Below the pieces are notes generated by a model that worked only from the letters and a program-made list of their open reading frames with translations, searched no databases and was not told the origin of the DNA. A program made the position numbers and the translations under genes. Positions 21,851 through 46,651 of a stretch of DNA of 64,000 nucleotides are shown here, in pieces; the first letter of the stretch is position 1; each line of letters starts with the position of its first letter. The DNA is from Podarcis gaigeae. Lineage: Eukaryota. The DNA lies in assembly GCA_964106915.2 (NCBI GenBank), contig OZ066916.1; one strand, written 5' to 3'.

Positions 21851-22286
21851 GTAAAGATTACTCTGAAGTGAGATATTGAAACGGGAGCGTGGGAGAATAA
21901 CAGCCCACAAAAACAACCGCTAGCGGGGGATATTATATCAAGGGAGGTTTGCCCAGTGGATGACAGTCACTATAATTTAGATAATTTTATATGTAGGTCT
22001 CCCCCCACACAACAAATAAGTTTTGATTCCATGCTGTTAGTTACAATAATATTCAATGAAGGATGAAAAATACTGGAGAAATCTGTATTTTAAAACAAAA
22101 TGTCTTCTGGTCACTGTAATAAACTGATACCGTATCTTAGTGAAATTGTAAGTTGTACAGTCCTCAGAGAATGCTACTACTTGAACATACAGAAAAGCCC
22201 TGAGACATTAGGGTTTTCCTAATAGAATGGGTCTTAAAATATGCTTCAATGAGAGGAAAACATCTGAATTGTTACTTTTCATGCAG

Positions 22287-22511
22287 CGTCCCATAATCTC
22301 AATCTGCTGGGGTCACAGGGACTCCCGCCTGCTCATGGCTTCTGGTCCTGCCCTCTACGTTGTCCGAGTGGAGCACAGAGTGTCCAGCTTACAGCTTCTG
22401 TGCCAGCAAACCATCGCTAGCTCCTTGCGGGATGACAAAGATATCAGTAAATTGACTCTGCCTCCCAGGCTCTGCTCATACCTCACCACTGCCTTTACAC
22501 CAACGATCAAG
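22287..22511 (+). CDS. TULP4: TULP4 exon 7 (last WD40 strands plus SOCS box)
   Basis: atgcag| RPIISICWGHRDSRLLMASGPALYVVRVEHRVSSLQLLCQQTIASSL...LTLPPRLCSYLTTAFTPTIK |gtaaac; BC-box SLQLLCxxxI and LPxxL cullin box; 225 nt. Confidence 0.96.
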
Positions 22512-23740: not shown

Positions 23741-23975
23741 CCTCCTATCCCAGACCCCAACAACATGAGAGATTTTGTTAGCTACCCAACATCTGGCAAC
23801 GAAAGGCTTCACTGCACAATGAAGCGGACAGAAGATGACCCGGAGGTTGGAGGGCCTTGCTATACACTGTATTTGGAATACTTAGGGGGTCTGGTGCCTA
23901 TCTTGAAAGGGCGCCGAATTAGCAAACTGCGGCCTGAGTTTGTCATCATGGATCCAAAGACTGACGGAAAAGCAG
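23741..23975 (+). CDS. TULP4: TULP4 exon 8 (first segment of tubby-like barrel)
   Basis: actcag| PPIPDPNNMRDFVSYPTSGNERLHCTMKR...EFVIMDPKTDGKA |gtacaa; 235 nt, phase 0-1. Confidence 0.96.
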
Positions 23976-24652
23976 GTACAAGGCATTAGGCAACTTTTTA
24001 GTGCCGATTTCTAGATTCCGGTCCTGTGCAGAGACCCTCAAGTGTTGCAAGTTTACTGCACGTGAATTTCTTGTGCAAACCTCGTTGATTTTATTGTATG
24101 TAACTGATCTTCCCATGAGAAAAAATATGCCCACAAATACGCTCTTTGTTGAAATGTGTCATTTTTGTCGGTCGAGCGTCATGTACTCACTGGAGCTCCC
24201 GCTTGTGGAACAAATTAGTGGATTGGGTTGTGGAGATGTGTATCCTGTTGATGCCCCAAAATTGTGCATCCACACAAGAACCCATGGCAGTACTATTTCC
24301 CTGCTCTCACCAGCCATTCTGAAAGAGACTCAGTAACAGGCATAGTTCAAGTCATCTTCCAAGTTGCAGTACATTATAATATTCAGTGTCCTGACAGGAG
24401 AGGGAAGATTCTCTAATTAGCTGTAGACATTTTTCAGTGTCAGAGAGATGCCTGTCAACTAGCATAATTGAGCACCATCCGCTTGATTTTAGGCTATTGC
24501 TGATTCTGCATGAGTTTCAAAGAATCCGCCGTGCTCCTTGCTGCGGTTGTATCTCGGCTATTGCTTATAGGATATCCTAGAAATGATTGACAGTTGTAAT
24601 TGGGATTTGGTTTCTGAAACATTATTTTTTTTAATGGGGCCTGTGTTGACAG

Positions 24653-24797
24653 ATGAAATCTATGGAAACAGTTTGATTTCCACCGTGATTGACAGCTGCA
24701 ACTGCTCTGATTCCAGTGATATTGAACTGAGCGATGACTGGGCTGCAAAAAAGTCTCCCAAAATCACTCGAGCTAGCAAATCACCCAAACTTCCCAG
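24653..24797 (+). CDS. TULP4: TULP4 exon 9
   Basis: tgacag| (D)EIYGNSLISTVIDSCNCSDSSDIELSDDWAAKKSPKITRASKSPKLP(R) |gtaacc; 145 nt, phase 1-2. Confidence 0.95.
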
Positions 24798-25251
24798 GTA
24801 ACCATTTTGCTATTTTCAAAACTCCACCTTCCTTTTTCTCCTGGGTCTTTGAATTCCTTTTTTATGCTGAGAGGGCACCCTATACACTTAGAACAAAGGG
24901 GAACCTTTTCATACAGGTATCAGAAACGGGCTGCTTCAGAAATGTTAGGGTTCTTCTTGCTGTGAAACATTATTAAGGCCCCTAGAGTTCTCCTCTGTGA
25001 TTAGCTACAAGCATAATACAGACATAATCCCCCTATAGTTCTGGTGTCCTGTCCCTGACAGTTTCAAATGTTTAACAGCACATAACAGTGCAGGGTACTT
25101 GTTAGGTTATTTGCTTGCTACTAGTGAGTGTTTTAAGCAGAGTTCTATATATATATTGTGTGTGTGTGTCTGTGTGTGTGAACGTGCGCACACGTGCATG
25201 GTGCAAATAATAATAATAAATCAAATCCTGTGATTAGGATAAAACCACCTA

Positions 25252-25833
25252 CCGTATTTTTCGTTCTATAACATGCACCCGACCATAACACGCACATAGT
25301 TTTTAGAGGAGGAAAACAAGAAAAAAAATATTCTAAACGAAACAGTGGATGTATGATTTTTGTGGTTCATGCTGTGGCCACAGACATGTGATCTGACGGT
25401 GAGTTTGGGGTAGCCCAATGCAAAAATCCTGAGGATCCATGTTTGCTGCTATTTAGGGACAGAGAGCCTGCTTGTGAAAAAACTTTGCTGCTATTTAGTG
25501 AGCTGAGTGGGGAGGAGAGAGGGACAGAGAGCTTGCTTGCTTTAAAGGAGCCAACCGGACACGAGTGTAAGCAGCTCCTCTCCTCTTCCGCTTTGCTCCT
25601 TTAAAGCAAGCAGGCTCTCTGTCCCTCTCTCCTCCCCACTCAGCGGCTCTTCTCCCGCTTTGATGTATCAAAGCGCACCACGGAGGAGGGAAGGAAGGGG
25701 AACCATGGATCCTCTGCTCACGACTGCAGCAGATCCCCCCGCCATCCGTAGGCATTCGCTCCATAACACGCACAGACATTTCCCCTTACTTTTTAGGAGG
25801 AAAAAAGTGAGTGTTATGGTGCAAAAAATACGG
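25252..25833. mobile_element. Tc1/mariner non-autonomous element with internal palindrome
   Basis: TA|ccgtattttttcgttctataaca ... tgttatggtgcaaaaaatacgg|TA; internal inverted repeat 25502-25644 (gctgagtggggaggagagagggacagagag / ctctctgtccctctctcctccccactcagc). Confidence 0.85.
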
Positions 25834-26263
25834 TACTTGGATTTTAATTTGTTGACTTAGTTTACATACTGTGTCCTGGTTCCAAGATTAGCTTTGCTTT
25901 TCAGAAATTTGGAATAATTGGCAAGCACTGAGAAAATCAGTGTTTGGGAATAAATTCTAGGTATATAGTGTGGGCAATGACTAGTGAAAGATAAGAACCC
26001 AGGACCACCATTGTATTCTACTATATATCCTAGATATAGATCAACATAAAGAAGTCTACAACAATCTCTCTCTCTCGCTCTCTGCTCAGACTTTTGAGAG
26101 CAAGGTTCCAGATTTGCTACTGGTGCTAGGAGAGTGCTTAGCTCCCTTCCCTGAGAAACATGTTCTCTAAGCACTATTCTGCTCTCTGCTTATGGGACAC
26201 TGTGGTCTGAGTTGTGTATTTTGATCTTTGTGGGGCTGGGCTAGATATCCCTTTTTCCATTCC

Positions 26264-26415
26264 ATAATAATAATAATAATAATATTTATACCCCTCCCAT
26301 CTGGCTGGGTTTCCCCAGCCACTCTGGGCTGCTCCCAACCGAATATTAAAAACACAGTACAGCATTAAACATTTAAAACTTCCCTAAACAGGGCTGCCTT
26401 TTGATGTTTCTAAAA
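26264..26415 (-). mobile_element. L2-type LINE 3' end with (TAT)n tail
   Basis: (aat)n followed by atttatacccctcccatctggctgggtttccccagccactctgggc, a typical lacertid L2 terminus from recall; a shorter copy lies near 4810-4872. Confidence 0.65.
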
Positions 26416-27302
26416 GGTGAGTGATGCTTCTCCAAAGCTCACAGCACCAGCCATGGGCATTGTGTCGGAGAAATAATGCCCTAGTTCTTTCGAAACAGCT
26501 GTTCTCCCTGTGATGCTCTTTAGCAGGGTATTAAGCCCGATGCTCTGGTTTGATGCATAGGCATAAGCCTATTATGATCCTTAGCTCCTGAACCTGGAAA
26601 CAGGCCAGCAAGGGGGGGAAATGCTTTCCTTACCAATTATTAAAATAGAACCACTTTTCTAGTACAAAAATTCCATGGGACTTCACATGTTATCTTTCCG
26701 TTTACTGTTTAGCCAGAACTAGAGATGCTGGGCAAAGTGCACTTGGACTATCTAGTATGTTAGGTTGAAGACAGATATGTGACATATTTTATAGTAATGG
26801 GCCGGTCTGAAATGCTCTTTCTGCATTCAGTCCCAATGCCCCTCGCCTTTCCAGAGTCATTCTGCAAAAGTTTGCAAGTATGAGACAGAAAGCAGCTATG
26901 CCAATTGACAGGCTCCATGTAACATCACCAAGAAACCTCCCTCCAATCCTCAGGTCCCTTTTGCATTTAAAGTTACCGTTTTAATTAATAAGGGACATGA
27001 ACATCCTTGCAGCTTTTTTCCAGGGGGGAGGAAACCTATAGAAGTCTAATGGCTAAGCCAGGGTGTCCTGTTCATTGGTGTGGCTGTCATCCCATTTGCA
27101 ATGTCAGACCGAAGGATGCACTGTGAACTCTTTTCATATTAACTCTGTCTTTGCTCTTGAAGCTACTTTCAAATGGTAAACCTTGTTAGCATTTTCCCCA
27201 CCACCCACCTAAATTTGTATTCCACGTTCTCTTTTTGTATAGAGAGACAGAGAGTACCTATTTGTGCCTGCCTCATTATTGTCATTTTTGTTTTGTATGC
27301 AG

Positions 27303-27447
27303 AATTAATATAGAAGCTCGCAAATCTCCAAAGTTGTCACGAGCTGCTCAGGAGATATCAAGATCTCCCAGGCTACCGATAAGGAAGCCTTCCATAGGTT
27401 CACCAAGCCTAACTCGTAGAGAGTTTCCTTTGGATGATATCACTCAG
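27303..27447 (+). CDS. TULP4: TULP4 exon 10
   Basis: atgcag| INIEARKSPKLSRAAQEISRSPRLPIRKPSIGSPSLTRREFPLDDITQ |gtactg; 145 nt, phase 2-0. Confidence 0.95.
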
Positions 27448-27808
27448 GTACTGCATGGCTATCTCATTATCTACCAGAAACAGAGGCACCATGTCTCTGA
27501 ATACCAGTTGCTAAGGTACAACAATGGGAGAGCCCTTTTGGCCCTGTGTCCTGTTTGTGGACTTCCCATAGGCATCTGATTGGCCACTGTGAGAACATGA
27601 TGTTGGACTAAATGGGCCTATGGCCTGATCCAGCATGCCCTTCTTATGTCCTTCACTCTTTTTCATTGGTGGAATTGCCCTTGTCAATGTGAAGATAGAA
27701 ATAATCATACTGATTGACCTAACAGGACTAGTGTAAGGATAACTAAGATAATGTATGTGAATACTATATAAATGCTTGTCGTCGTTCTGTCATACCTTTT
27801 TATTGCAG

Positions 27809-27902
27809 CACAACTACCTTGCTCAGGTCACGTCAAATATCTGGGGAACCAAATTCAAAATCGTGGGTTTGGCTGCTTTCCTACCAACCAATCTTGGTGC
27901 AG
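27809..27902 (+). CDS. TULP4: TULP4 exon 11 (tubby-like strand SNIWGTKF)
   Basis: ttgcag| HNYLAQVTSNIWGTKFKIVGLAAFLPTNLGA |gtaaat; 94 nt, phase 0-1; not in the ORF track. Confidence 0.95.
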
Positions 27903-28715
27903 GTAAATTAACTCTTTAAGAACTGTCTTCATTTCAGACTCTTCCTGACCAGAAAAAGTGTGCAAATATTCTTTAACAGTAGTTAAAATTTTGCATCTAA
28001 TTCAGTCATGGAGTTGTAAGCCATGAAACAGTTTGGACTATTTCTGTGGCATCTTCTACTGGGTCAAAACTCCATAGAAGTGGTGCTTAAAAGGATACTG
28101 TCCCTAATTGTGGGAGTATACCAGAAAAACATTCCATGTAGGGAGAAATTCCTTCTGCTCCAGAGCCTATTTCATTGCCATGTTAAGGATATACTTTATA
28201 TCTGTTTGCTTGGTAAATAAATCACATCTGTAGCTCTTTTGATTTTCCCCACTAGCTTTTGGAGGAGTGGTCATGTTTGTATTCCTCATCCACATGGTTT
28301 CCCAGTAGTCCAGACACTGACCAAGCCCAAACTTGCTTAATTTCAGTAATTGAATGAAATCATACTAGATCTTTTGCTTAGAGACTTCTTCAGTTATGAA
28401 AAAATACATAAATAGAAAGTACTTCCGGATACGTGTATATTTTTGTCTTTGTGTGGCATAACTGGGAAGCCTTGTTTGCCTGTTATCTTCCCGGTGCATG
28501 TACATACAACAAAATGTAGTTCTGTGTGCTTGTCGCATGCAGTCATCCAAATATTGCATCCTCTTTCTTAAATAGACATGCTTTCCATGTAGGAGTTTTA
28601 TCATGGTTGAAGTCCCTCTAATTGGCTGATTCCTTTAGTAATGCTGGACCCTCCCTTTGTATTTTCTGCATCACAGATCTTTTCTTTTTTCCCTTTCCTT
28701 GCATCCTTTTTGTAG

Positions 28716-28859
28716 TTATCTATAAAACCAGCTTGCTGCATCTCCAGCCTAGGCAAATGACGATATACCTTCCAGAAGTGCGGAAGATTTCCATGGACTA
28801 CATAAACCTTCCTGTCTTCAACCCCAATGTTTTTAGTGAAGATGAAGATGATTTGCCAG
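28716..28859 (+). CDS. TULP4: TULP4 exon 12
   Basis: ttgtag| (V)IYKTSLLHLQPRQMTIYLPEVRKISMDYINLPVFNPNVFSEDEDDLP |gtgaga; 144 nt, phase 1-1. Confidence 0.95.
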
Positions 28860-30377
28860 GTGAGATTGAACTGATTGTCTAAAATTTTATGAAACTCTGT
28901 AAGAAGATTGACTCTCCTTGTAATTAAAAGCCCAAGGCACATGAGTCCATTCCATGTTTTGCAAGATAGCTTGTTGTGGTGGAGAGGCCAAATTGGAGCT
29001 TGCTCTTTGACTTCCATTTTGGAGTCTGGTGAGGCTGAGAACTGCAAAATAGGGCTTGAAAGACCTGTGTACTTCCGGTGTTGTCATTGGGAGCCTGGTA
29101 GAGCATGGAGGGCTCCCTGTGCCCTTCGCAGCCTGTGTGGGCATTCCATACCATACTGCCCTTGCCCTGTGTTGTGAACAGTGCATTCAAGATCAGGGGA
29201 GCTGGAAGGCCTCGGACACAGGTGTACATACATGGTGCATTTAAAGCCTTAATGGAACCTTCTTCTCTGACTCCTGAAAGGAATGTGAAGTTGAAAAGGC
29301 TGATGAGGCAAGCCCAGGAACAGTGCAGGCTGCTGGGTGGAGGGGTGTTTCTTGGCTCCAACAAGTTTCTGATGACATAGCTGAGAGCTCAAAAGGGCCT
29401 ATTGACAATTCATAATTAATCTGTAAATGGCAGCAGCAGCAACAACCACCATTAGTTTAGATGTCCGGTGGATGTCCTTTTAATTAATCCATTTTAAATG
29501 GGTCAGTTATGAATTTGATCCAGAGAGAGTCCATTAATCCCCTGAGAAGAAGCATCTGTTAAACTGGGAATTAAATTATGAGGCTTCAGTATTAACCGCA
29601 TTTTAGAAATCTGCAAGGGGATTGACACAAGCAGACAATCAAAAGACCTGGAGTGATATAGAGGCACTCATAATTGAAAAGGTTCAATCTCCAATGGTGA
29701 CTTAACTGCACAACCTTAGAGTGGCAGGAATCCATCATGGTGCCTGGGAATTGAGGCTCCAGTGGTAGCCAGAAGCATTCACAAATGTCAACAGGTGAAC
29801 AGGTTGTATTCTCTCCTCAGATTCACATTGGGTTACTGTCATTCATGCCTTCATAACTGCTTGCTTTTCATGACATGGACTATAGCTTATTATACATTCC
29901 ACCCACTTGCATCAGAGTCTGGTTTAACAGAGTGGCAGAATACTAGATTGTTCCTGTTCCTTCTGAGATAAAGGTCTGATGCAGATACAGTGCTGGCTTC
30001 CTGCTAACTGTGGTCAACAAATGGGAAGCCAAACCCTTTCTGGGGCAAATTCCCAGTCCTTTGCTATGACGAAGCAGTTTGTTGGCTCCAATGCTTACCG
30101 CTATTAAGTCTAGCCAGGATTTCCCTTAAACCAGGTTATTGAACTGAGGACCATGGAGAAAGAGAGACTTACCCCAAGGAGGTGAGGGGCTTTGTGCAGG
30201 GACTGCATGTTCTCAGATCTGGCTCTTAATACCCTTACTGTAGTGAGGTGGGAGATAATATTACTGACCTAATATGACAGCACAAATACAAAAGTTAAAT
30301 AATCAGTATTTAACAAATGATTCCAATACCTTTAAAATGGAAATTAATGCTCTAGATGGCAGAATTAATTTAGTATA

Positions 30378-30609
30378 CAGTAGTACCTTGGGTTACAGAC
30401 GCTTCAGGTTACAGACGCTTCAGGTTATAGACTCTGCTAACCCAGAAATAGTACCTCGGGTTAAGAACTTTGCTTCAGGATGAGAACAGAAATTGCGGTG
30501 CGGTGGCAGCAGGAGGCCCCATTAGCTAAAGTGGTACCTCAGGTTAAGAACAGTTTCAGGTTAAGAACGGACCTCCAGAACGAATTAAGTTCTTAACCGG
30601 AGGTACCGT
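30378..30609. mobile_element. Tc1/mariner MITE, family A
   Basis: Same internal sequence as 5326-5543; right TIR degenerate (aggtaccgtta). Confidence 0.85.
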
Positions 30610-30672
30610 TATATCTCTTTTTGGATTAAGGCTGTGATGCTGTATTCTGATACTCATATCTTTTTGTCCCAG

Positions 30673-33326
30673 TGACTGGAACATCTGGAGTTCCGGAGAA
30701 CAACCCACCTTGCACCGTAAACATCCCGATTGCTCCTATTCACAGCTCAGCACAAGCAATGTCACCAACACAGAGCATAGGGCTGGTTCAGTCTTTGCTG
30801 GCCAATCAGAATGTGCAGCTGGACGTCCTCGCCAATCAGACGACAGCTGTGGCAGCGGCGGACCACGTGACTGACAACGCAGTCCACTACCCAATCCCAA
30901 GCAGGTATTCCAACCCAGGCCAAGTGATCTTTGGAGGAGTTGAAATGGGGCGCATCATCCAGGCACCCCCTCAGCTCCCCCTGCCGCCCCAGGGTGCAAT
31001 CCAGATGGCAATTGTGGACCACAGAGATGGGGACAGAGACCACGAACACCTCCAGAAGGCCAAGACGTTGCGTCCAGTGCCACAGGCAGCTGAAGGAGAA
31101 GCATCCGTCTTCACCACTGCCCAGGAAATTCAGATGAACAAAATGAATCCTCCCCCTCCGTACCCTGGAACCATACCAGCAGCTCCCACCACAGCTCCTC
31201 CTCCTCCTCCGGTACCTCCCCAACCTCCCATAGATCTCTGCTTGAAAAAGGGAGATTTCCCCCTTTATTCCACAGGGCATTATCAAACCCCTCTCGGCTA
31301 TGAAAGAATCACTACCTTCGACAGCAGCGGGAATGTGGAGGAAGTTTGCCGGCCTCGAACGCGGATGCTGTGCGCCCAGAACACTTACACTCTGCCAGGG
31401 CCTGGCAGCTCCGCCACTTTAAGGATCACTTCCTCAGAGAAGAAGATTCAGCAGCCTTGTACCAGCGCCACCCTAAACAGGCTCACGGTGCCGCGTTACT
31501 CCATTCCTACTGGGGATCCGCCACCTTACCCGGAGATCGCAGCCCAGCTGTCTCAAGGTCGCGGCATGGCCCAGAGATTGGACAACAGCATAATCCACGC
31601 CACTCTGCGGCGGAACAGCAGAGAGGCAGCGCTGAAAATGGCCCAGCTGGTCGACAGCCAGAGAGCCACTCTGCAGCTGCCCCCGAAACTGAAGAGCAAC
31701 ATTGTGGCAGCCCAGTACCAGCAGAGGGTGCCAACGGCACTCTACACCTGCAGCCAGTGCAGCAGCGGCAGTGGCAACAACGGTGGCGGCGGCGGTGGCA
31801 GCGGCAACCCTAATAGTGGAAGTGGGAATATGAGTGGCATCAGTGGTAACAGCAGCACGTCCAGCATGAACAGCATGAGACCGGACATGACGACCGGGAG
31901 CAGCTCTCAGCACAGCTCGGTCATCGCACACTCCGTCAGTACTTCGCCCCTGGCCTCCCAGTCCTCTTACAATTTGCTTAGCCCATTGGACAGCTCTCGT
32001 GAACGGACAGATTATGTGAACTCTGCCTTCATGGAGGATGAAACTCTTTCTCAGCACTGCCCTGTGGAGAAACCGGTGCGCCACATGCCTGTGGCCATGG
32101 CCGAGCCAGGCATTGGTGTCAAAAGACCACCCCCCTATCAGTGGGAACCAATGGTGGGTGAGGAGATATGGGTCCCTCAAGAAAGGACAGCTCCGAGTAC
32201 TTTGCCTCACCCTGCCAAACCTGCCCCCCTAGTCATTGGCCAAACTCAGCACCTGGATATATCCCGAGCACCGTTTGTTTCCCCCAAATCTCCAACCAGT
32301 CCCACTGCCACTTTCCAGATGAGCTACGGGGTTGGAGCCCCATACTTGGGGAACTACGGTGTTCCTCCCCCTCCTCCCCCTCCTCTTCTTCAGGGAATGC
32401 AGGTCCCCTGTTCTCCCAAAGAAGCTTTGGCCCCACCCCAGATTGCACAACAGGAGCCAACGGTTGTGCTTCAGCCAGGTTACCCCTCCAACCTTGCTTA
32501 CTGCCCTTTGCCCCCCCTGTACCCTGGAAATAGCACTTGCTCGAGTTTACAGCTGCCACCAATGGCCTTGCACCCGTGGAATTCCTACAGCACATGCCCA
32601 CCTGCTGCGCAGAGCACCCAAGGCACTCTGCCCCCCAAGGCGCTGCTGGTGGTGGAGAAGCCTGTCATGTCTCCTCCACCACCACCACCACCACCAGTGG
32701 AGCCTCAAGGCCACGCGGGTACAGACGCGATGGCGGAGACAGCAGACAACTTCCAAGAAGTCCTGTCCTTGACCGAGAGCCCCGTGCCTCAGCGGACAGA
32801 CAAGTTTGGGAAGAAGAATCGGAAGCGCCTGGATAGCCGAGCGGATGAAGGGAATATGCAGGCTATTACGGAGGGAAAGGTCAAGAAGGAGGCAAGGACG
32901 ACTCTGACCGATTTCAACTCGCTGATATCCAGCCCTAGGCTGGGCAGGGAGAAGAAGAAGGTCAAAAGTCAAAAGGACCAGTTGAAGTCCAAAAAACTGA
33001 ACAAGATGAACGAATTTCAGGACAGCTCAGAAAGTGAGCCTGAACTGTTTATTAGCGGGGATGAGCTAATGAACCAGAGCCAGGGCAGTAAAAAGGGATG
33101 GAAAACAAAAAGGAACTTGAGAACAGCCAGTGAACTGGATGAGTTTAAGTGCCGGAAAGCCAACGAAAAGGAGGACGGGCGGCTGGGAAGCCAGGGCTTT
33201 GTGTACGTGATGGCTAACAAGCAGCCCTTGTGGAATGAGGCAACACAAGTCTATCAACTGGACTTTGGAGGGAGAGTGACCCAAGAATCTGCAAAAAACT
33301 TCCAGATTGAGCTGGAAGGGAGACAG
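30673..33326 (+). CDS. TULP4: TULP4 exon 13 (2654 nt; Pro/Ser-rich disordered region, basic NLS-like clusters, start of C-terminal tubby segment)
   Basis: gtcccag| (V)TGTSG ... [37 protein letters not shown] |gtaaga; matches the 887-aa ORF; phase 1-0. Confidence 0.97.
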
Positions 33327-34636
33327 GTAAGATAACGAGTTGGAAATTACAGGCTGCTTCTTGTGTTAGGCCTTGACATGTGCGCCAGAGGAACAGGGCT
33401 GGCCCAAGACTTTGTGCCTCTGATGCGAGTGCTGCTACTGCCAAATCCTCCTTCCCCCTCCCCTCCAGCTTTGTAAGTTTTGCTGCTGCTAACATGGTGG
33501 CAGAACTCGCCATCTCCTCCCATCCCTATCTTCTGCCTTGCTCTGGGGAAAGGGGTCCTTCCTTAGAGTTTGGCATTCTGGGCGAGGTGGCCTTGGAAAG
33601 TGCCTGCACCACTACCACTTTGCCTCGCTGGCTAATTAAAGGTTTCAAATCACTAGAACTTCTATTTTTTAAAGTCCAGCTGTTGTGGCAAAGCAGTGTT
33701 GGGGCAGACACTCTTCCAGTTCACCTTACTCAGTATACTTTGCTCTAAGGAAGGACCCCCTTCAGTGTAAGGCATGAGGATGAGGCAAGTGTCTGGAAAG
33801 CTCAAAGCAACTGGGTGCTTGGGTAGTGGTGACAGCTGGGTGGATGGACTGGTGAAACAAGCAAGTGAGGACCTGGGGGCAGTAATCTGCCACCTCCTAC
33901 TGCCACCACCAGAAACAGTTGCCTCAGTTTGCTTTCTACAGGAATGCTGGCCCTGCAAATGCAGTATGATGTGACTGCTTTCAAATAGACACACCTTCTT
34001 GCAGATTAATTTGCAGGAAATAGTGGCATGTGAAAGGCCTGGTGCAAACAGGATCCTGATGCCTTATCCCTTGGGTGGCCAATATCTGCCCAGGGCATTG
34101 GACATACGTTTGTGTAACATCTGTAGAGCATTTGTCTCTGTCACAATTTCACAAATATTGAATACAGTCCATACCAAGGTTGCCTTTGAGGTACAGGCCA
34201 CTTCTCTGCAGCATAAAAATCTTGACTGTATAAACCCAAAGCTATTCTATTCCACCAAGAAGAAATTTGATGGTAGCTGCTTATAATTGTGGCTTCTGTG
34301 CCTCAGAGCAGCTATAACAGATTATGGGATATTTTAAATGTCACAGTGAATAGAAACATATGAACCCATGTAACTATAAGGAACATAGAAATATGATGTC
34401 ATCTTCAGCTGATGTCATACCACAGATGCACATTTCACATGAAAATAATACAATGTGAGAACAGCCTTTTGACACTCTATCATGATTACAAGACTAATAC
34501 AACAACCAACCAACCAAACCAGTGTCAAAGGTCATGAGAGTCTGAAAAACAGGCAACAGTAATGTATGTGTAAGGTGAAAGTGATGGGGGAATATATGAA
34601 CTTTAAACCCTGGCCATTATTTTCAGTCTCTTAGAG

Positions 34637-34774
34637 CAGGTATAGTGAATTTGTGGCCTTCCAAATGTTGTTGGACTACTACTCCCATTGTCCCTGACCA
34701 TTCACAATGCTGACTCGGGCTCATGGGAGTTGGAGTCCAAGAACATCTCAAGAATCATCAGTTCCCCAGCCCTG
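34637..34774. mobile_element. Palindromic hAT-derived MITE (older copy)
   Basis: cagg...cctg ends; core ggactactactccca / tgggagttggagtcc; same family as 48948-49084. Confidence 0.7.
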
Positions 34775-35468
34775 CTGCTGCTGCAGCATAGAAAACCCTG
34801 GTGCATTCTATAGCAAAGATGTATGAAAGGAGGTGCAAAACATTGTACAAACCTTAGGCAGCTTTTATTTTCTGGGATCCAGGATTGGAATGGCACTTTA
34901 GCTAGCTCTGCTTCATTGTGTAATTTTGCAGTCTCCCTGATCCACCAGGAGGCTGAGCAGACAAGTCACTGTAGATTCAATTGTGATATCTATAGGTTAT
35001 TTCGGGATTGCAGTCGTGTTGCATCGACATTGTCCAAGAACAACCAAGATCCACCAGAACATAACGGCTTCAGTCTGCTGAAAATCATGGGAAATTCCTG
35101 CTGTGCTGATATGATCTCCTCAGAATATTCAACCTCATTAATCATTGTGGGCTTTGAACTTCCCCTGTGAAAATAGGCGAAGCCAGTGCTATATTTCTAG
35201 AAAAGAGGCGCCAGAACTCACCATGAGCACTTCCCTCATTCTCTTAGAACGGCAATGCTGCCCACCTGAAAGGTGCCTGAACTGAGTTCCTCTGGGCAGA
35301 GCCACTTGCCAATTGAAATGCAGCTCTCATATGAGGCAAGAAGTTGTGAAATCACCCCGTCCTTGCTTTAATGGACCAATTTTCATATTTAACTGCTGCT
35401 CGATTTCTTGTTTATCTTTACCAACTTTTCCTCTTCTTTATTTCTTTCCCCGCCACTTTCTCCTCCAG

Positions 35469-35585
35469 GTCATGCAGTTTGGGAGGATCGATGGCAATGC
35501 TTACATTTTGGACTTTCAATATCCATTTTCAGCGGTGCAGGCCTTTGCAGTGGCTCTGGCTAATGTGACTCAGCGCCTCAAATGA
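35469..35585 (+). CDS. TULP4: TULP4 terminal coding exon 14 (tubby C-terminal strands and helix)
   Basis: ctccag| VMQFGRIDGNAYILDFQYPFSAVQAFAVALANVTQRLK TGA (35583-85). Confidence 0.97.
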   Translation, partial: VMQFGRIDGNAYILDFQYPFSAVQAFAVALANVTQRLK

Positions 35586-41802: not shown

Positions 41803-42318
41803 CAGGGGCGCCGACTTATAAAAAATATTGGGGGGGCGGGGGCCCATACCGACTTATAAAAAATATTGGGGGGGGCCAAGACCTCCAAACCGCTGCTGCT
41901 GGGGGAACGAAAGGGGCGAGCCCCGGGCTGCCCCGACCTTAAGTGAACCTGTGAGGGCCCGCCCTTTGCGGCAGCCGATTGGCTGCCGCCGTGGGCGGTG
42001 AATATTAATGAGCTAGGGGGAATCCCCGCTTCTCGCGGGACTGACGCCAGCCCCGCGAGATTGTTGATGGGTCGAGAGCCCGCAACCCCACCCCCTCTCT
42101 AGATCGGGAGTGGCTTTGTTTTAACTCATTACTGAATGTATTTTAAAAGGTAACTATCGTCAAACAAGGAAAATAAAAAATACCAACATAATTTTGTGAT
42201 TTTACAAAGCATAATATAACTAATAATTTTCTTAAATTATTGGGGGGGGCAGAGCCCCCCCAAACGAATTTTTGAGGGGGCTCGGGCCCCCTCAGGCCCC
42301 ATGGAGTCGGCGCCTATG
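41803..42318. mobile_element. hAT non-autonomous element with CpG-rich interior
   Basis: TIRs caggggcgccgact / agtcggcgcctatg; perfect 8-bp TSD tactgcag (41795-41802 and 42319-42326). Confidence 0.9.
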
Positions 42319-43249
42319 TACTGCAGGGCTTCAAACGAGGGTGGAATTTCAACCCCAATGGGGAACAGGTTTTATTGGCTGCGCTGCTAAGGGTTAGGAA
42401 TTCAATTTATAGCATTCTATGCTTTCAATTGTGGGCACATAAGCAGCGGCTTGAGTGATAGGCCACAGGTTCTGATTTTGCTCTCAATGCAAGCCAACTA
42501 TTTGGAGTGGTAGGATTCTACCACTTGGGTCAGACTTGAAATGTAGGTGGAGCCAGAATTTTATAGTTTGACACGACAAATTCATGGAGGATGAAGCTTT
42601 ATTCTAATTCCACTATTGAAGGAAATATGCCTTTGTACCAGTAGCTGGGAACCACTCAGGCCCTGCTTTTGGGCTTCCTGTGGGCATCTGGTTGACCATT
42701 TTGAAAACAGAAATACTAGGTGGGCCTTTAGTTTGATTCAGTGGGTCTCTTATGTTCTCCCCCCCCCCCTCCACACACCAGTTTCAAGAACTGCCCATTT
42801 CTCACTTGCTTGGTCTTTGCTTGGAAACTGATGCTTTAAAATTGACAGGCAGCTGTAGGTATTGTTTCTATGCCGCCTTAATGTGTTCCTCAAAGCAGAA
42901 TCAAGCTTCATGTTCTGAACTGTCTGAAGGTTGCTGAAAGGTGATATACCAGTAGCACTGACGCTTCCTTGGTTTGCAGGAACCAAACATATATCGGGCA
43001 AAATACCAGATGATGGAGAAACCGCTCTGGTTGCGAGGAATACCGAGTTGCCAAATGAGGGCCTCTGCCCCACCTCAAACCATGCCATGTGTAAACGTCC
43101 CTGAAAAACATCACGGGACCAGTTTCCCAGGGGCCATTTTGCCACCAGTCCCCGGTGGCGCTGTCCATGGTGCTGATTCTTTTCCAGCTCCACCTGGTCC
43201 GTGGACCATGGGGATTTTATCTAGTTAAAAACAACCACCACCACCATAC

Positions 43250-43830
43250 ATTAACGGCCAGCCTCGCCTTGCCTACTCTTTACGCGCATTTAATAACAGA
43301 AGCCCTCCGCGTCCCCTTAGAAAATGTATGGGGCTTCAGCAGCCAAAGCAGAGCTGGAGCCGCCGCCGCCGCCCACAAAACTCCCTTCGGCGCCCAGTGG
43401 CGGCGCTCTGCCGAGAAAGGAAGAGAGGAAAGCGGAGGGTCGCTTCAAGCGGCGGCCTCTCGGCCATTGCAGCTCTCTCCCCCTCGGCAGCCCGGCTCAG
43501 CGCCGAGAGCTCCAGACCGAGGCCCAGGCGCCACCGGGGTCTCCATGGCCGAGCGCGGGAGGCGGCGGCGGGCTTAGAGCGGGGCCCCCGGGGGTTGCTG
43601 CTGTCTCCGCGGCCGCTGGCTGGGTGAGGAGGGGCTGGCGCGATGTCCGGGTGTGGGATGGAGGCGGATTACCCCGCCTTTGAGAACCCGCTCTGCGGCG
43701 AGCTCAAGCACATTTGCAAAAGGATCAGAGAGACCTACAAGGAGATCAAAGAGGACCTGACCCCTTACAAAGATGATCGCTACTACAGGTAAGAGCAGCG
43801 GAGGCGAAGGGAGCAGCGCGCGGAGGGATG
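43250..43830 (+). promoter_or_regulatory. TMEM181: CpG island / upstream promoter of TMEM181 (exon 1a)
   Basis: High GC and CpG density, a (GCC)n run, and overlap with the first coding exon. Confidence 0.85.
43643..43788 (+). CDS. TMEM181: TMEM181 alternative first coding exon 1a
   Basis: MSGCGMEADYPAFENPLCGELKHICKRIRETYKEIKEDLTPYKDDRYY(R) |gtaaga; phase 2 joins exon 2; second in-frame ATG at 43658; in-frame TGA at 43625-27 upstream; resembles the long vertebrate TMEM181 N-terminus (...KDDRYYRLAPMR). Confidence 0.88.
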
Positions 43831-45379
43831 GAGAGGGAAAGAGAGGCCTCTTTATTTTCTAGGGAAATAGCTGTTTGCATCAGCGGTCTGGCCAAGCCCT
43901 GTTAAAAATGCTTCTTTAAATACAGCACGTAGGATTCAGAAGCAGCTATTCATTTATGAGCAATCCCAAGGGGAATCCTTATTTGCACGCACTTTGGGGG
44001 ACGTGATTTGCAGAGTGAAGCCTTCCCTCCCACCCCTACTTCTCCTCCTCCTTCTGGCCGGCTGCGGCAGCCTTTTCCCTCCCGCGCCGCCGCTTTCTCA
44101 GTACCAAGGATGGAGATGGTCCAGCGTTTCAATATGGCTGCTGGGAAAAGGTTACCTTCTTCCAGCGGAGCTACCCTTTTTGTTTCTTTTGCGATGAGGT
44201 TTTGATGAGTCACTTCAGAGAGTCCCTGAAAGGGAACGAGTTGTTTGTGTAAGGAAAAGGGGGAAAGGGAAAGAGTTGCTTGAGTAACCTTCCTGATGGC
44301 ATTTTCTAAATGTGGAATCTGGGTCTGGGATTCTTCTCGACTCTGATCATATTCCACCACCACCCTGCCCGGAAAAGCTGAGAGGGATTTCCCCCACCCC
44401 ATCACCGCCGAAAGAGCCCATGATCCTCTTGTAGTTACATGGGGTTGTAATGTAAATAATCAGGGCTCCACCTTCTCTCCCATGAGTCCTCAGGATCTAA
44501 GAGCTGTGGGTTCTTTGCTCATTCTTCCCCAAACCTTCTCCTGCCCATATTCAGGTTTTCCCCCACCTAATAGCTTATTTCCCTTTCATATGAAGAAGAA
44601 AACTACCTTTCCAAAATTTTCAGAGTTCGACAAAATCGCAGGAGCAAGGTGTCCCCCTGAGCCACAAGCCACGGAATGTCCTCCGTGTGGAACTCCATGA
44701 AATAGATGGTTCCTATGGTCAGGGGTCCCTTTACCGTTACCTATGCATAATGCATGCATTACTAACTAAAGTCTTTGCGGAATTTTATTTTTCCATGTGG
44801 TTCAGGTTCCAGCAACTCTAGCCATAAAGAAATACAATTAAAAAACAACAGCCCTCCTTGTAATACTGGATGAAATCCAGCTCCGCTAAATCCAGTGAGA
44901 GGTTTGCTGTTGACTTCAACAAAATGAGAATTGCATCCTTTACCTACAGTCTTAGCTCTTATCCCTTGATGAAAGCCACATCTCTGTACATATTTACTCA
45001 GAAGCTAAGTATCACTGTGCTTAATAGGGATTGTATTGCAAATTACGGGTCTGCTGTATAATAAAAACGGAGGTGCAAACCTTAAGAAGTATTATAAAAT
45101 TAGAAATTAAGTAATTACCAGGTCCAATCTTATGAGCTAGGAAAAGCCTGCTTCTATCTGAATCACTGGTGGGTGGCACGTCACATTTTGCCTTTTGTAC
45201 CGTTAGGACAGATAAAGGCTATTGGAGGGTTAATTATTAAAACGAACTAATTTTTTTAAAGTATGTGTATTTGTGGGGAAATAGAAGGTAAGATTTGAGT
45301 GGCGTTGCTGAGAACTAAATATATGCCTCTCTTTCCATGGGAGATAGCTCTGTGTGCGTATTTGTGATTGAGAGACTTG

Positions 45380-45960
45380 AAAACTACAATTCCCATGTCT
45401 CCTTGCGAGGCGCACTGCCATGGAACTAACTGCCCTGAGGTAGTTTCGCCCCTGGCGGCTTTCAAACTGACAGCCGTTCGCAGAAGGAGCAACGCGCAGG
45501 CGCACACCCTCGGTGCCTACGGGCACACTATACTGACAGGCGCTCAGAGGGTGTTTTCCGAGATGTTGCGGCCCCGCCCCTCCGGTCACGGCCCCGCCCC
45601 CTACAGCACCCGAGAGGCGGAGCTGGCACGTTGGGTGACGCACGCGGAAGTGATGTGTGCAGCTGGCGCTGCCACGGAGCTTGGCGGGCGGGCAGCTGCC
45701 GCTTAGCTTGGGAGAGACCCGCTGCCGGAGTGGAGGCAGCGCGGCGCGCATGCGCAGCATGGATATGGATCTGTGAGTTTTGGGGGTAGCGGGACCTGCG
45801 CTGAGGGGTGGGGGGTGCGCGGTAGTTGCGCAGGCCGCGGAGGGAACACTGGCTGACCTGAGCCTATTCCTCTAGCCGGACCACACGGGTACTGAGCGAG
45901 TGTTGCCCCGCCCCACCCGGCGTAATAAGCCGGAGCGTGTAGTGCTTTAGGCACAGATTT
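45380..45960 (+). promoter_or_regulatory. TMEM181: Second CpG island / housekeeping-type promoter of TMEM181 (exon 1b)
   Basis: ZNF143/THAP11 motif ACTACAATTCCCA (45383-95), NRF1-like sites (45493-504, 45745-56), two GC boxes (~45570-45600), half-CRE GTGACGCA (45635-42), ETS site CGGAAGTG (45645-52). Confidence 0.85.
45750..45772 (+). CDS. TMEM181: TMEM181 alternative first coding exon 1b (very short)
   Basis: ATG CGC AGC ATG GAT ATG GAT CT|gtgagt; three in-frame ATGs (45750, 45759, 45765); phase 2 gives M(RSM)DMDL-LAPMR, analogous to the short mammalian MEPLAPMR start (recall). Confidence 0.8.
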
Positions 45961-46651
45961 GGAGGAGGAAAACGCTCCTCTTTCCCTGCCTTGTGGGGCT
46001 GTCAAGAATTGGGGGGGGGGGGCTTAGGCTGTACGAGGAACTCTGTCTAACCCAGCGACCTGCTAATAAGTGTCCCAGAAGCTCCCAAGCAGAGCAGAAT
46101 GGGAACAGCTCCCTCACTACCTCCCCATTTTATCTAAATCAGAGCAAGCTGGGAAGGCAGCAGTTCCCCTGAACATACACAGACTGCTTGCTTACTATGG
46201 AATAGTCGCCGCCACCCCCTTTGCCTTCATAATTAGTGTCAGAGCCTTGGGTCAGCAGGTGACAGGTGTCAGGTGAATATGACACAGACTTTGAGCCGCA
46301 GCCCCGTTCATTTTAGAAACAAATCATTTGAGGAATGGATCCTTCTTTCCTCTAGCTCCTTTATCGCTTAGTGATTGTGAGAGGCAGGGAGAGATGTCTG
46401 AGCATGTGTGTCATATTTGTACCACTCATTAAGGCCTTTTGTGCATTTGGTGAGCTGGGTAGTGTAAACTTATTTTTGACAGAAATGCTCAGAAATGCTC
46501 ACATCGTCCCCAAAGCCATGCCAATGTAAAGGCTGGAGTCTGGACAGTGTTGGCTCGAGTTACATTGACATACAAAAGCTAGCTCAAATGTTACAGTGAA
46601 GCAAGATAAGACATTTTCAGGTACCACATGTCTTAACATAGGTATCACACA

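What the first reader, a model, noticed from the sequence alone, without database searches (positions are those of the whole stretch)
23768..35585. TULP4 appears to encode a complete tubby barrel split into three pieces by ~96-aa and ~865-aa insertions
As I recall, TULP4 is usually annotated with only a short C-terminal tubby fragment. Conceptual translation shows the missing N-terminal tubby segments upstream and in the right order. Exon 8 FVSYPTSGNERLHCTMKR..PCYTLYLE..ILKGRR..EFVIMDP parallels TUB FALRPAPQGITIKCRITR..PTYFLHLD..LLAGRK..NYLISVDP. Exon 11 YLAQVTSNIWGTKFKI parallels YIGKLRSNLMGTKFTV. Exons 11-12 LGAVIYKTSLLHLQPRQMTIYLP parallel [24 protein letters not shown]. Then, from 33198, [46 protein letters not shown] parallels [46 protein letters not shown]. 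Exons 9-10 and most of exon 13 would be very large disordered loops inside the barrel. TULP4 sequence is read from this window; TUB sequence is from recall; co-folding is inference, and the point may already be visible in structure-prediction databases.
Basis: partly seen in the sequence, partly recalled or inferred. Interest (0 to 1): 0.8.

Follow-up and report, generated by a model that had tools for sequence, protein, structure and literature searches.

The report
TULP4 tubby barrel in three pieces
The lizard TULP4 gene in this window encodes a complete tubby-type beta-barrel whose sequence is interrupted by two long, probably floppy loops (about 100 and 860 residues). This is real and ancient, but it is a feature of a known protein that structure predictions already show.

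Summary
Observation confirmed. The window holds exons 2-14 of a squamate TULP4. The seven exons cited all have AG/GT splice sites and are 90-100% identical to Pogona TULP4.

Interpretation supported, mainly by predicted structure.
- Pfam Tub matches only the C-terminal exons strongly (profile 127-253).
- The exon 11-12 segment matches profile 70-147 at E 1.4e-5.
- Exon 8 alone matches nothing.
- In an invertebrate orthologue with a short first insert, one Tub match runs over profile 2-144, so it includes the exon-8 segment.

AlphaFold2 models of Pogona TULP4 and of a short aphid orthologue put the three segments into 4+4+4 strands plus a C-terminal helix. These superpose on the whole solved tubby domain (Z 20-21, 218-220 aligned residues). 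Both inserts are low-confidence.

The three segments are conserved across Bilateria. The inserts are conserved only within vertebrates.

The two basic residues of tubby's PI(4,5)P2 pocket are replaced by Q and T. The vertebrate insert carries four conserved PPxY motifs.

A published AlphaFold figure already shows a TUBBY domain in TULP4, so novelty is low. I found no text describing the split. The window's exons were not joined.

The parts
22281..22511 (+). Exon 7, carrying the SOCS box, immediately upstream of the barrel
   Evidence: Pfam SOCS_box E 6.1e-8, 33.2 bits (cut-off 23.5). tblastn map of an orthologue onto the window.
23741..23962 (+). Barrel segment 1 (exon 8, codons 1-74): N-terminal helix and strands 1-4
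   Evidence: 99% identical to P0002. Model residues 4-77 have pLDDT 72-88 and form four strands. Included in the structural alignment to tubby. Orthologue P0208 matches Tub profile 2-144. No Pfam or PDB hit on its own.
23963..27444 (+). Insert 1, about 100 aa: end of exon 8 (23963-23975), exon 9 (24653-24797) and exon 10 (27303-27444), with the introns between them
   Evidence: Model residues 78-177 have pLDDT below 50. 87-97% identical among vertebrates and 12-25% to invertebrates. Repeated [KR]SP[KR] sites.
27445..28789 (+). Barrel segment 2: last codon of exon 10, exon 11 (27809-27902) and the first 24 full codons of exon 12 (28716-28789); strands 5-8
   Evidence: Pfam Tub profile 70-147, E 1.4e-5, on P0002:335-620. 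A profile of the segment finds only tubby-family chains in the PDB. Model residues 178-234 have pLDDT 84-92 and form four strands.
27824..27832 (+). Codons Q-V-T at the place of mouse tubby K330-L-R332, the PI(4,5)P2 pocket
   Evidence: hmmsearch alignment to 1c8z chain index 90-92. The chain starts at residue 241. Role of K330 and R332 taken from PMC10445746.
28790..33194 (+). Insert 2, 864 aa: rest of exon 12 (28790-28859) and most of exon 13 (30673-33194), with the intron between them
   Evidence: Model residues 235-1087 have pLDDT below 50. Composition 13% Pro and 10% Ser, with four PPxY motifs. 71-81% identical among vertebrates and 18-20% to invertebrates.
33195..33326 (+). Barrel segment 3, first part (end of exon 13)
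   Evidence: Pfam Tub profile 127-209, E 9.2e-12. Model strands from residue 1090.
35469..35585 (+). Barrel segment 3, second part (exon 14): last strands, central C-terminal helix and stop codon
   Evidence: Pfam Tub profile 222-253, E 3.1e-10. Model helix 1153-1168. 100% identical to P0002.

Best explanation
This is the 3' part of TULP4. The protein has a WD40 propeller, then a SOCS box, then a tubby domain.

The tubby domain is complete but discontinuous in sequence.
- Exon 8 supplies an N-terminal helix and strands 1-4.
- Exons 11-12 supply strands 5-8.
- The end of exon 13 plus exon 14 supply strands 9-12 and the central C-terminal helix.

The three pieces are predicted to fold into one 12-stranded barrel like that of tubby and TULP1.

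Two loops, after strand 4 and after strand 8, have been expanded into predicted disordered regions. In vertebrates they are about 100 and 860 residues long. In invertebrates they are roughly 35-170 and 75-360 residues, net of the native tubby loops.

Shown here: the exon structure, the conservation pattern, the profile matches and the predicted fold.

Inferred: that the pieces really co-fold in the cell. Also inferred: that the barrel no longer binds PI(4,5)P2 through the canonical pocket, because both basic pocket residues are replaced; that it serves instead as a protein- or ligand-binding module of a SOCS-box ubiquitin-ligase receptor; and that the vertebrate loops act as platforms for short linear motifs (PPxY, SP sites).
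For: Exon map and collinearity with Pogona TULP4.

Profile matches:
- Pfam Tub on the window's exon 13 end and exon 14.
- Tub profile 70-147 on the segment 2 region, E 1.4e-5.
- Tub profile 2-144 in one stretch on P0208:250-445.
- Tub profile 116-254 in one stretch across the short second insert of aphid TULP4.
- TULP4-family profiles hit only tubby, TULP1 and TULP3 in the PDB.

Predicted structure:
- AlphaFold2 models show 4+4+4 strands plus a C-terminal helix; the segments have pLDDT 72-94 and the inserts are below 50.
- In Foldseek, the only significant PDB matches are tubby and TULP1, E 1e-10 to 1e-13.
- VIA-align gives Z 21.3 with 218 of 265 residues of 1c8z for the aphid model.
- It gives Z 20.6 with 220 of 273 residues of 1s31 for the Pogona model.
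- Only 214 Pogona model residues have pLDDT of 50 or more, so all three segments must be in the alignment.

Conservation: segments are 34-83% identical between lizard and invertebrates, against 12-25% for the inserts.

Protein language-model neighbours of segment 1 alone are all Tub clusters, at lead level only (score 0.85).
Against: Exon 8 alone, and a 26-sequence profile of it, give no significant match to Pfam Tub or to any tubby chain in the PDB. Only 2 of 26 orthologous segment 1 pieces touch Tub, best E 0.036.

The sequence-level link for segment 1 rests on one orthologue. Five other orthologues gave no such N-terminal coverage: three had no Tub hit and two matched only profile ~112-147.

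Co-folding is a prediction. The mean pLDDT of the long model is 40.6 because of the inserts, and pTM is 0.37.

AlphaFold2 may lean towards a fold it recognises from the C-terminal half.
Confidence: 0.85

Rival explanations
1. Only the C-terminal ~150 residues are a tubby remnant. Exon 8 and exons 11-12 are conserved for another reason, for example as an extension of the SOCS-box or propeller module, and do not belong to a barrel.
For: Exon 8 has no significant profile match on its own. It begins only a few residues after the SOCS box. A preprint says AlphaFold predicts direct propeller-TUBBY contact.
Against: Segment 2 matches Tub profile 70-147, and its profile finds only tubby-family chains in the PDB. 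P0208 matches profile 2-144. The models align to the entire tubby domain at Z about 20, with more aligned residues than segments 2 and 3 alone could supply.
Confidence: 0.04
2. The barrel forms, but not constitutively within one chain. The long inserts would allow conditional folding, or assembly in trans (domain swap or oligomer), possibly controlled by modification of the inserts.
For: An insert of about 860 residues between strands 8 and 9 is a large entropic cost. The inserts carry conserved SP and PPxY sites. From memory, unverified: a short human isoform ending before the third segment is annotated.
Against: Nothing here speaks directly for it. Invertebrate orthologues with much shorter inserts have the same three segments. 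The models close the barrel in cis.
Confidence: 0.07
3. The co-folded barrel is a modelling artefact. AlphaFold2 recognises the C-terminal tubby half and fills in the rest.
For: No experimental TULP4 structure turned up among the PDB hits. PAE was not seen. pTM is 0.37 and 0.62.
Against: Independent sequence evidence supports segments 1 and 2. pLDDT is 84-92 in those segments. Two orthologues only ~43% identical gave the same strand layout, though their input alignments share many rows. The segments are strongly conserved across phyla.
Confidence: 0.04

Closest known systems
Tubby C-terminal domain of TUB and TULP1 (PDB 1C8Z, 1I7E, 1S31, 2FIM, 3C5N; Pfam PF01167)
   Same: Predicted 12-stranded barrel around a C-terminal helix. 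Superposes over the whole domain at Z 19-22, with 28-34% identity over aligned residues. The C-terminal third is strongly similar in sequence, about 100 bits.
   Different: The sequence is split by inserts of about 100 and 860 residues after strands 4 and 8. The two basic residues of the PI(4,5)P2 pocket, K330 and R332, are Q and T. The N-terminal third is too diverged for HMMER to detect on its own.
Invertebrate TULP4/Tusp orthologues (765-890 aa; aphid, bugs, snail, nematodes, amphioxus)
   Same: Same order of WD40 propeller, SOCS box and three barrel segments. Same Q/E and T/S at the pocket positions in most of them.
   Different: The inserts are far shorter and unrelated in sequence: 12-25% identity. 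No PPxY motifs in 25 of 25 rows.
Arabidopsis At5g01750 (PDB 1ZXU) and the scramblase/LOR tubby-like superfamily
   Same: Same barrel-with-central-helix fold, Z 12-13 over 149 residues.
   Different: Much more distant, at 9-12% identity. A compact single-piece domain.

Membership tests
Tubby domain (Pfam PF01167 Tub) | Score above Pfam's gathering cut-off (27 bits) | tested here: met
   Window exon 13 scores 45.6 bits and exon 14 scores 40.6 bits. Orthologue P0002 scores 110.4 bits.
Tubby domain (Pfam PF01167 Tub) | Coverage of the whole 256-position profile, not just the C-terminal half | tested here: inconclusive
   Positions 127-253 are covered directly. Positions 70-147 are covered at E 1.4e-5, 25.4 bits, just under the cut-off. 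Positions 2-144 are covered only in orthologue P0208. Window exon 8 alone gives no hit.
Tubby domain (Pfam PF01167 Tub) | 12-stranded closed beta-barrel around a central C-terminal helix | tested here: met
   Met in prediction only. The models have 4+4+4 strands plus a terminal helix. Z 19.8-21.7 to 1c8z, 1i7e and 1s31 over 205-220 residues spanning the whole chains.
Tubby domain (Pfam PF01167 Tub) | Canonical PI(4,5)P2 pocket with K330 and R332 (mouse tubby numbering) | tested here: not met
   These positions align to Q and T in the window (27824-27832), and to Q/E/H/N and T/S/K in orthologues. Role of the residues from PMC10445746. Lipid binding itself is not testable here.
TULP4/TUSP orthologue group | WD40 propeller, then SOCS box, then tubby, collinear with named TULP4 proteins | tested here: met
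   Big exon 90-91% identical to Pogona and Varanus TULP4. Exon-by-exon identity 90.5-100%. Upstream propeller and SOCS exons are in the window.
SOCS-box substrate receptor of cullin-RING ligases | SOCS box able to bind Elongin B/C and a cullin | not testable with these tools
   The SOCS_box profile match is present, E 6.1e-8. Binding was not tested.

The most novel reading that the evidence does not exclude
The discontinuity is a design, not an accident. In vertebrates the tubby barrel would act as a rigid hub from which two long regulated loops project. The second loop's four conserved PPxY motifs would recruit WW-domain proteins such as NEDD4-type ligases or YAP-like factors to a SOCS-box/cullin receptor. 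The first loop's SP sites would tune this. The barrel itself would have lost phosphoinositide binding. I found none of this described in the papers I could search.
Probability: 0.2. Interest if true: 0.55.

Novelty: already known. Interest (0 to 1): 0.3.

Why it matters
TULP4 is the least understood tubby-family member, and is usually drawn with a C-terminal tubby domain.

Knowing that the domain is complete but discontinuous matters in four ways:
- It fixes construct design: any "tubby domain" construct must include residues just after the SOCS box.
- It affects variant interpretation, because exon 8 and exons 11-12 are fold-critical.
- It affects how the short isoforms that end before the third segment are read.
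- The replacement of both PI(4,5)P2 pocket residues argues against carrying tubby's lipid-sensor function over to TULP4.

The conserved PPxY-rich loop gives a testable handle on partners.

None of this changes the known classification of the gene.

Tried and rejected
Searches that found nothing:
- Pfam on each window exon alone gave no hit for exons 8, 10, 11 and 12.
- phmmer of exon 8 against PDB sequences gave nothing.
- A 26-sequence profile of the exon-8 segment against the PDB gave only noise (guanylyl cyclase-activating protein, antibody chains; E 0.17 or worse).
- Pfam on five further invertebrate segment 1 + segment 2 pieces gave no N-terminal coverage.

Steps not possible or not taken:
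- A search meant to fetch canonical TUB and TULP1-3 sequences returned only TULP4-type proteins in its 120 listed rows. A profile-profile (hhalign) test of the exon-8 segment against canonical tubby could therefore not be run.
- The large representative-protein search was not used.
- The window's exons were not joined and no deletion construct was built. Database orthologues (P0002, P0212, P0208) stood in for them.
- Primate rows were left out of the alignments. No contig taken for human was used.

Literature:
- The Mukhopadhyay and Jackson 2011 review is not held.
- The text searches that combined TULP4 with domain- or structure-related terms and the list of TULP4 papers turned up no description of a split domain.

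Rejected idea: exon skipping cannot remove insert 1. Exons 9 and 10 total 290 nt, so skipping them shifts the frame. Insert 2 lies almost wholly inside one exon.
Full report
**What is there.** The window carries most of a TULP4 gene on the + strand. The large exon (30672-33332 as an ORF) is 90-91% identical to TULP4 of Pogona vitticeps and Varanus komodoensis, and 72-78% identical to bird and mammal TULP4. The source is therefore a squamate reptile.

A tblastn map of an orthologue places residues 81-417 on six upstream exons between 10330 and 22511. The last of these (22281-22511) holds the SOCS box (Pfam SOCS_box, E 6.1e-8).

**Checking the observation.** I read the seven exons from the DNA:
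- exon 8: 23741-23975
- exon 9: 24653-24797
- exon 10: 27303-27447
- exon 11: 27809-27902
- exon 12: 28716-28859
- exon 13: 30673-33326
- exon 14: 35469-35582, stop codon at 35583-35585

All have AG acceptors, and all but the last have GT donors. Each was translated alone and has no stop. The translations align in order to Pogona TULP4 (P0002) residues 343-1508 at 90.5-100% identity, and the junctions account for the single split codons.

Wherever a contiguous protein was needed I used database orthologues by reference. The main one was P0002, which is 99-100% identical to the window in exons 8, 11, 12 and 14.

**Sequence evidence for a tubby domain in three pieces.** Pfam's Tub profile has 256 positions.
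- On the window, the end of exon 13 matches positions 127-209 (E 9.2e-12) and exon 14 matches positions 222-253 (E 3.1e-10). Exons 8, 10, 11 and 12, scanned singly, give nothing.
- On full-length P0002, Tub scores 110 bits.
- The piece P0002:335-620 matches positions 70-147 at residues 517-573, which is exactly exons 11-12. The E-value is 1.4e-5 at 25.4 bits, just under the 27-bit cut-off.
- A profile of that segment from 24 orthologues finds six sequences among the 177,635 in the PDB. All six are tubby, TULP1 or TULP3 (E 0.008-0.05).
- A profile of the whole region hits the same proteins at E 1e-29 to 1e-32, in two stretches.

Exon 8 is the weak point.
- Neither the exon nor a 26-sequence profile of it finds tubby.
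- Only 2 of 26 orthologous pieces touch Tub, best E 0.036.
- The one positive sequence-level link is orthologue P0208. Its first insert is the shortest seen, and its exon-8 segment is 55% identical to the lizard's. In P0208, one Tub match runs from profile position 2 to 144 (E 1.7e-5).
- In aphid TULP4 the second insert is short enough that a single match spans positions 116-254.
- Language-model neighbours of the exon-8 segment alone are all Tub clusters. At score 0.85 this is only a lead.

**Structural evidence.** Two AlphaFold2 models were built with alignments of TULP4 orthologues.

The Pogona piece is P0002:340-1508, 1169 residues.
- It has confident stretches at residues 4-77, 178-234 and 1088-1169, with pLDDT mostly 72-94.
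- These contain a short helix, then 4 + 4 + 4 strands of three or more residues, then a terminal helix.
- Residues 78-177 and 235-1087 are below pLDDT 50.

The aphid piece is P0212:389-765, 377 residues. It shows the same layout.

Comparison with solved structures:
- Foldseek finds only tubby and TULP1 chains as significant matches for the aphid model (E 1e-10 to 1e-13), with alignments spanning the whole model.
- For the aphid model, VIA-align gives Z 21.3, rmsd 3.9 Å and 218 of 265 residues against mouse tubby 1c8z (model 1-377, chain 241-504).
- For the Pogona model, VIA-align gives Z 20.6, rmsd 4.1 Å, 220 of 273 residues and 31% identity against human TUB 1s31 (model 1-1169, chain 297-559).
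- The Pogona model has only 214 residues with pLDDT of 50 or more, so the ~220 aligned residues must come from all three segments.

The next unrelated folds score Z 7 or less. The Arabidopsis tubby-like protein 1zxu lies between, at Z 12-13.

These are predictions. I could see neither PAE nor coordinates.

**Evolution.** The three segments are conserved across Bilateria. Lizard against insects, snail and nematodes gives 34-61% identity for segment 1, 49-63% for segment 2 and 72-83% for segment 3. The same comparison gives 12-25% for insert 1 and 18-20% for insert 2.

Invertebrate proteins are only 765-890 residues long. The second gap, measured between conserved motifs, is 147-403 residues there, against a median of 830 in vertebrates. 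That measure includes the roughly 40 residues that join the same motifs in tubby itself (counted partly from memory).

Within vertebrates the inserts are themselves conserved: 87-97% for insert 1 and 71-81% for insert 2. They are therefore under constraint rather than being mere spacers.

The split layout is thus ancient, and the huge second insert is a vertebrate expansion.

**Likely working.** TULP4 has a propeller, a SOCS box and then this barrel, the layout of a substrate receptor for a cullin-RING ligase.

The hmmsearch alignment to 1c8z places the window's Q and T (27824-27832) at chain indices 90 and 92, which are K330 and R332. Those two residues form the canonical PI(4,5)P2 pocket, and mutating both nearly abolishes membrane clustering (PMC10445746). 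Nearly all TULP4 orthologues have Q/E and T/S at these positions.

I infer that the barrel does not bind PI(4,5)P2 in the tubby manner and acts as a different binding module.

The inserts leave the barrel after strands 4 and 8. Insert 2 is 13% proline and 10% serine. It holds four PPxY motifs, kept in 36-37 of 37 vertebrate rows and absent from all 25 invertebrate rows. Insert 1 holds repeated [KR]SP[KR] sites. That these are docking and phosphorylation sites is inference from motif knowledge only.

**Comparison with what is known.** TULP4 (TUSP) is an established tubby-family member. A preprint on the IFT-A structure states that TULP4 combines a TUBBY domain with an IFT121-like propeller, and that AlphaFold predicts the two to interact (10.1101/2022.08.09.503213). 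So the assembled barrel has already been looked at.

In the papers I could search I found no text that describes the domain as discontinuous, places the inserts, or notes the lost pocket residues. The main family review is not held.

I therefore rate the feature as already known in kind, with some undescribed detail.

**Verdict.** Interest is modest. It is a correct and tidy reading of a known protein, useful for construct design and variant interpretation, and it is not a new kind of system.

Noticed in passing
window 31152-31163, 31518-31529, 32127-32138, 32511-32522: Four PPxY motifs (three PPPY, one PPLY) lie in the large insert. They are kept in 36-37 of 37 vertebrate TULP4 rows and absent from all 25 invertebrate rows. 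They are possible WW-domain docking sites.
   Followed up: partly
window 24653-24797 and 27303-27447: Exons 9 and 10 are both exactly 145 nt. Together they carry four [KR]SP[KR] sites and one GSPS site, resembling proline-directed kinase sites. Skipping both exons would shift the frame.
   Followed up: no
window 22281-22511: The SOCS box exon lies directly upstream of the first barrel segment (Pfam SOCS_box, E 6.1e-8). The barrel therefore starts within about 15 residues of the SOCS box.
   Followed up: partly
window about 31770-31860 (exon 13): A Gly/Ser/Asn-rich low-complexity run sits in the lizard insert. The window's exon 13 is 11 residues longer than that of Pogona.
   Followed up: no
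window 30762-32601, minus strand: Several long antisense ORFs (up to 245 aa) overlap exon 13. They lie in the GC-rich coding stretch (GC 0.52-0.53) and are most likely by-products of its composition.
   Followed up: no
window 42001-46000: A second GC-rich block (GC 0.50-0.52) lies downstream of TULP4.
   Followed up: no
P0002:340-1508 model, residues 468-486, 545-586 and 1062-1075: Inside insert 2 the model draws a hairpin and helices, at pLDDT below 50. The last helix, just before strand 9, also appears in the aphid model (278-293) and may belong to the domain.
   Followed up: no
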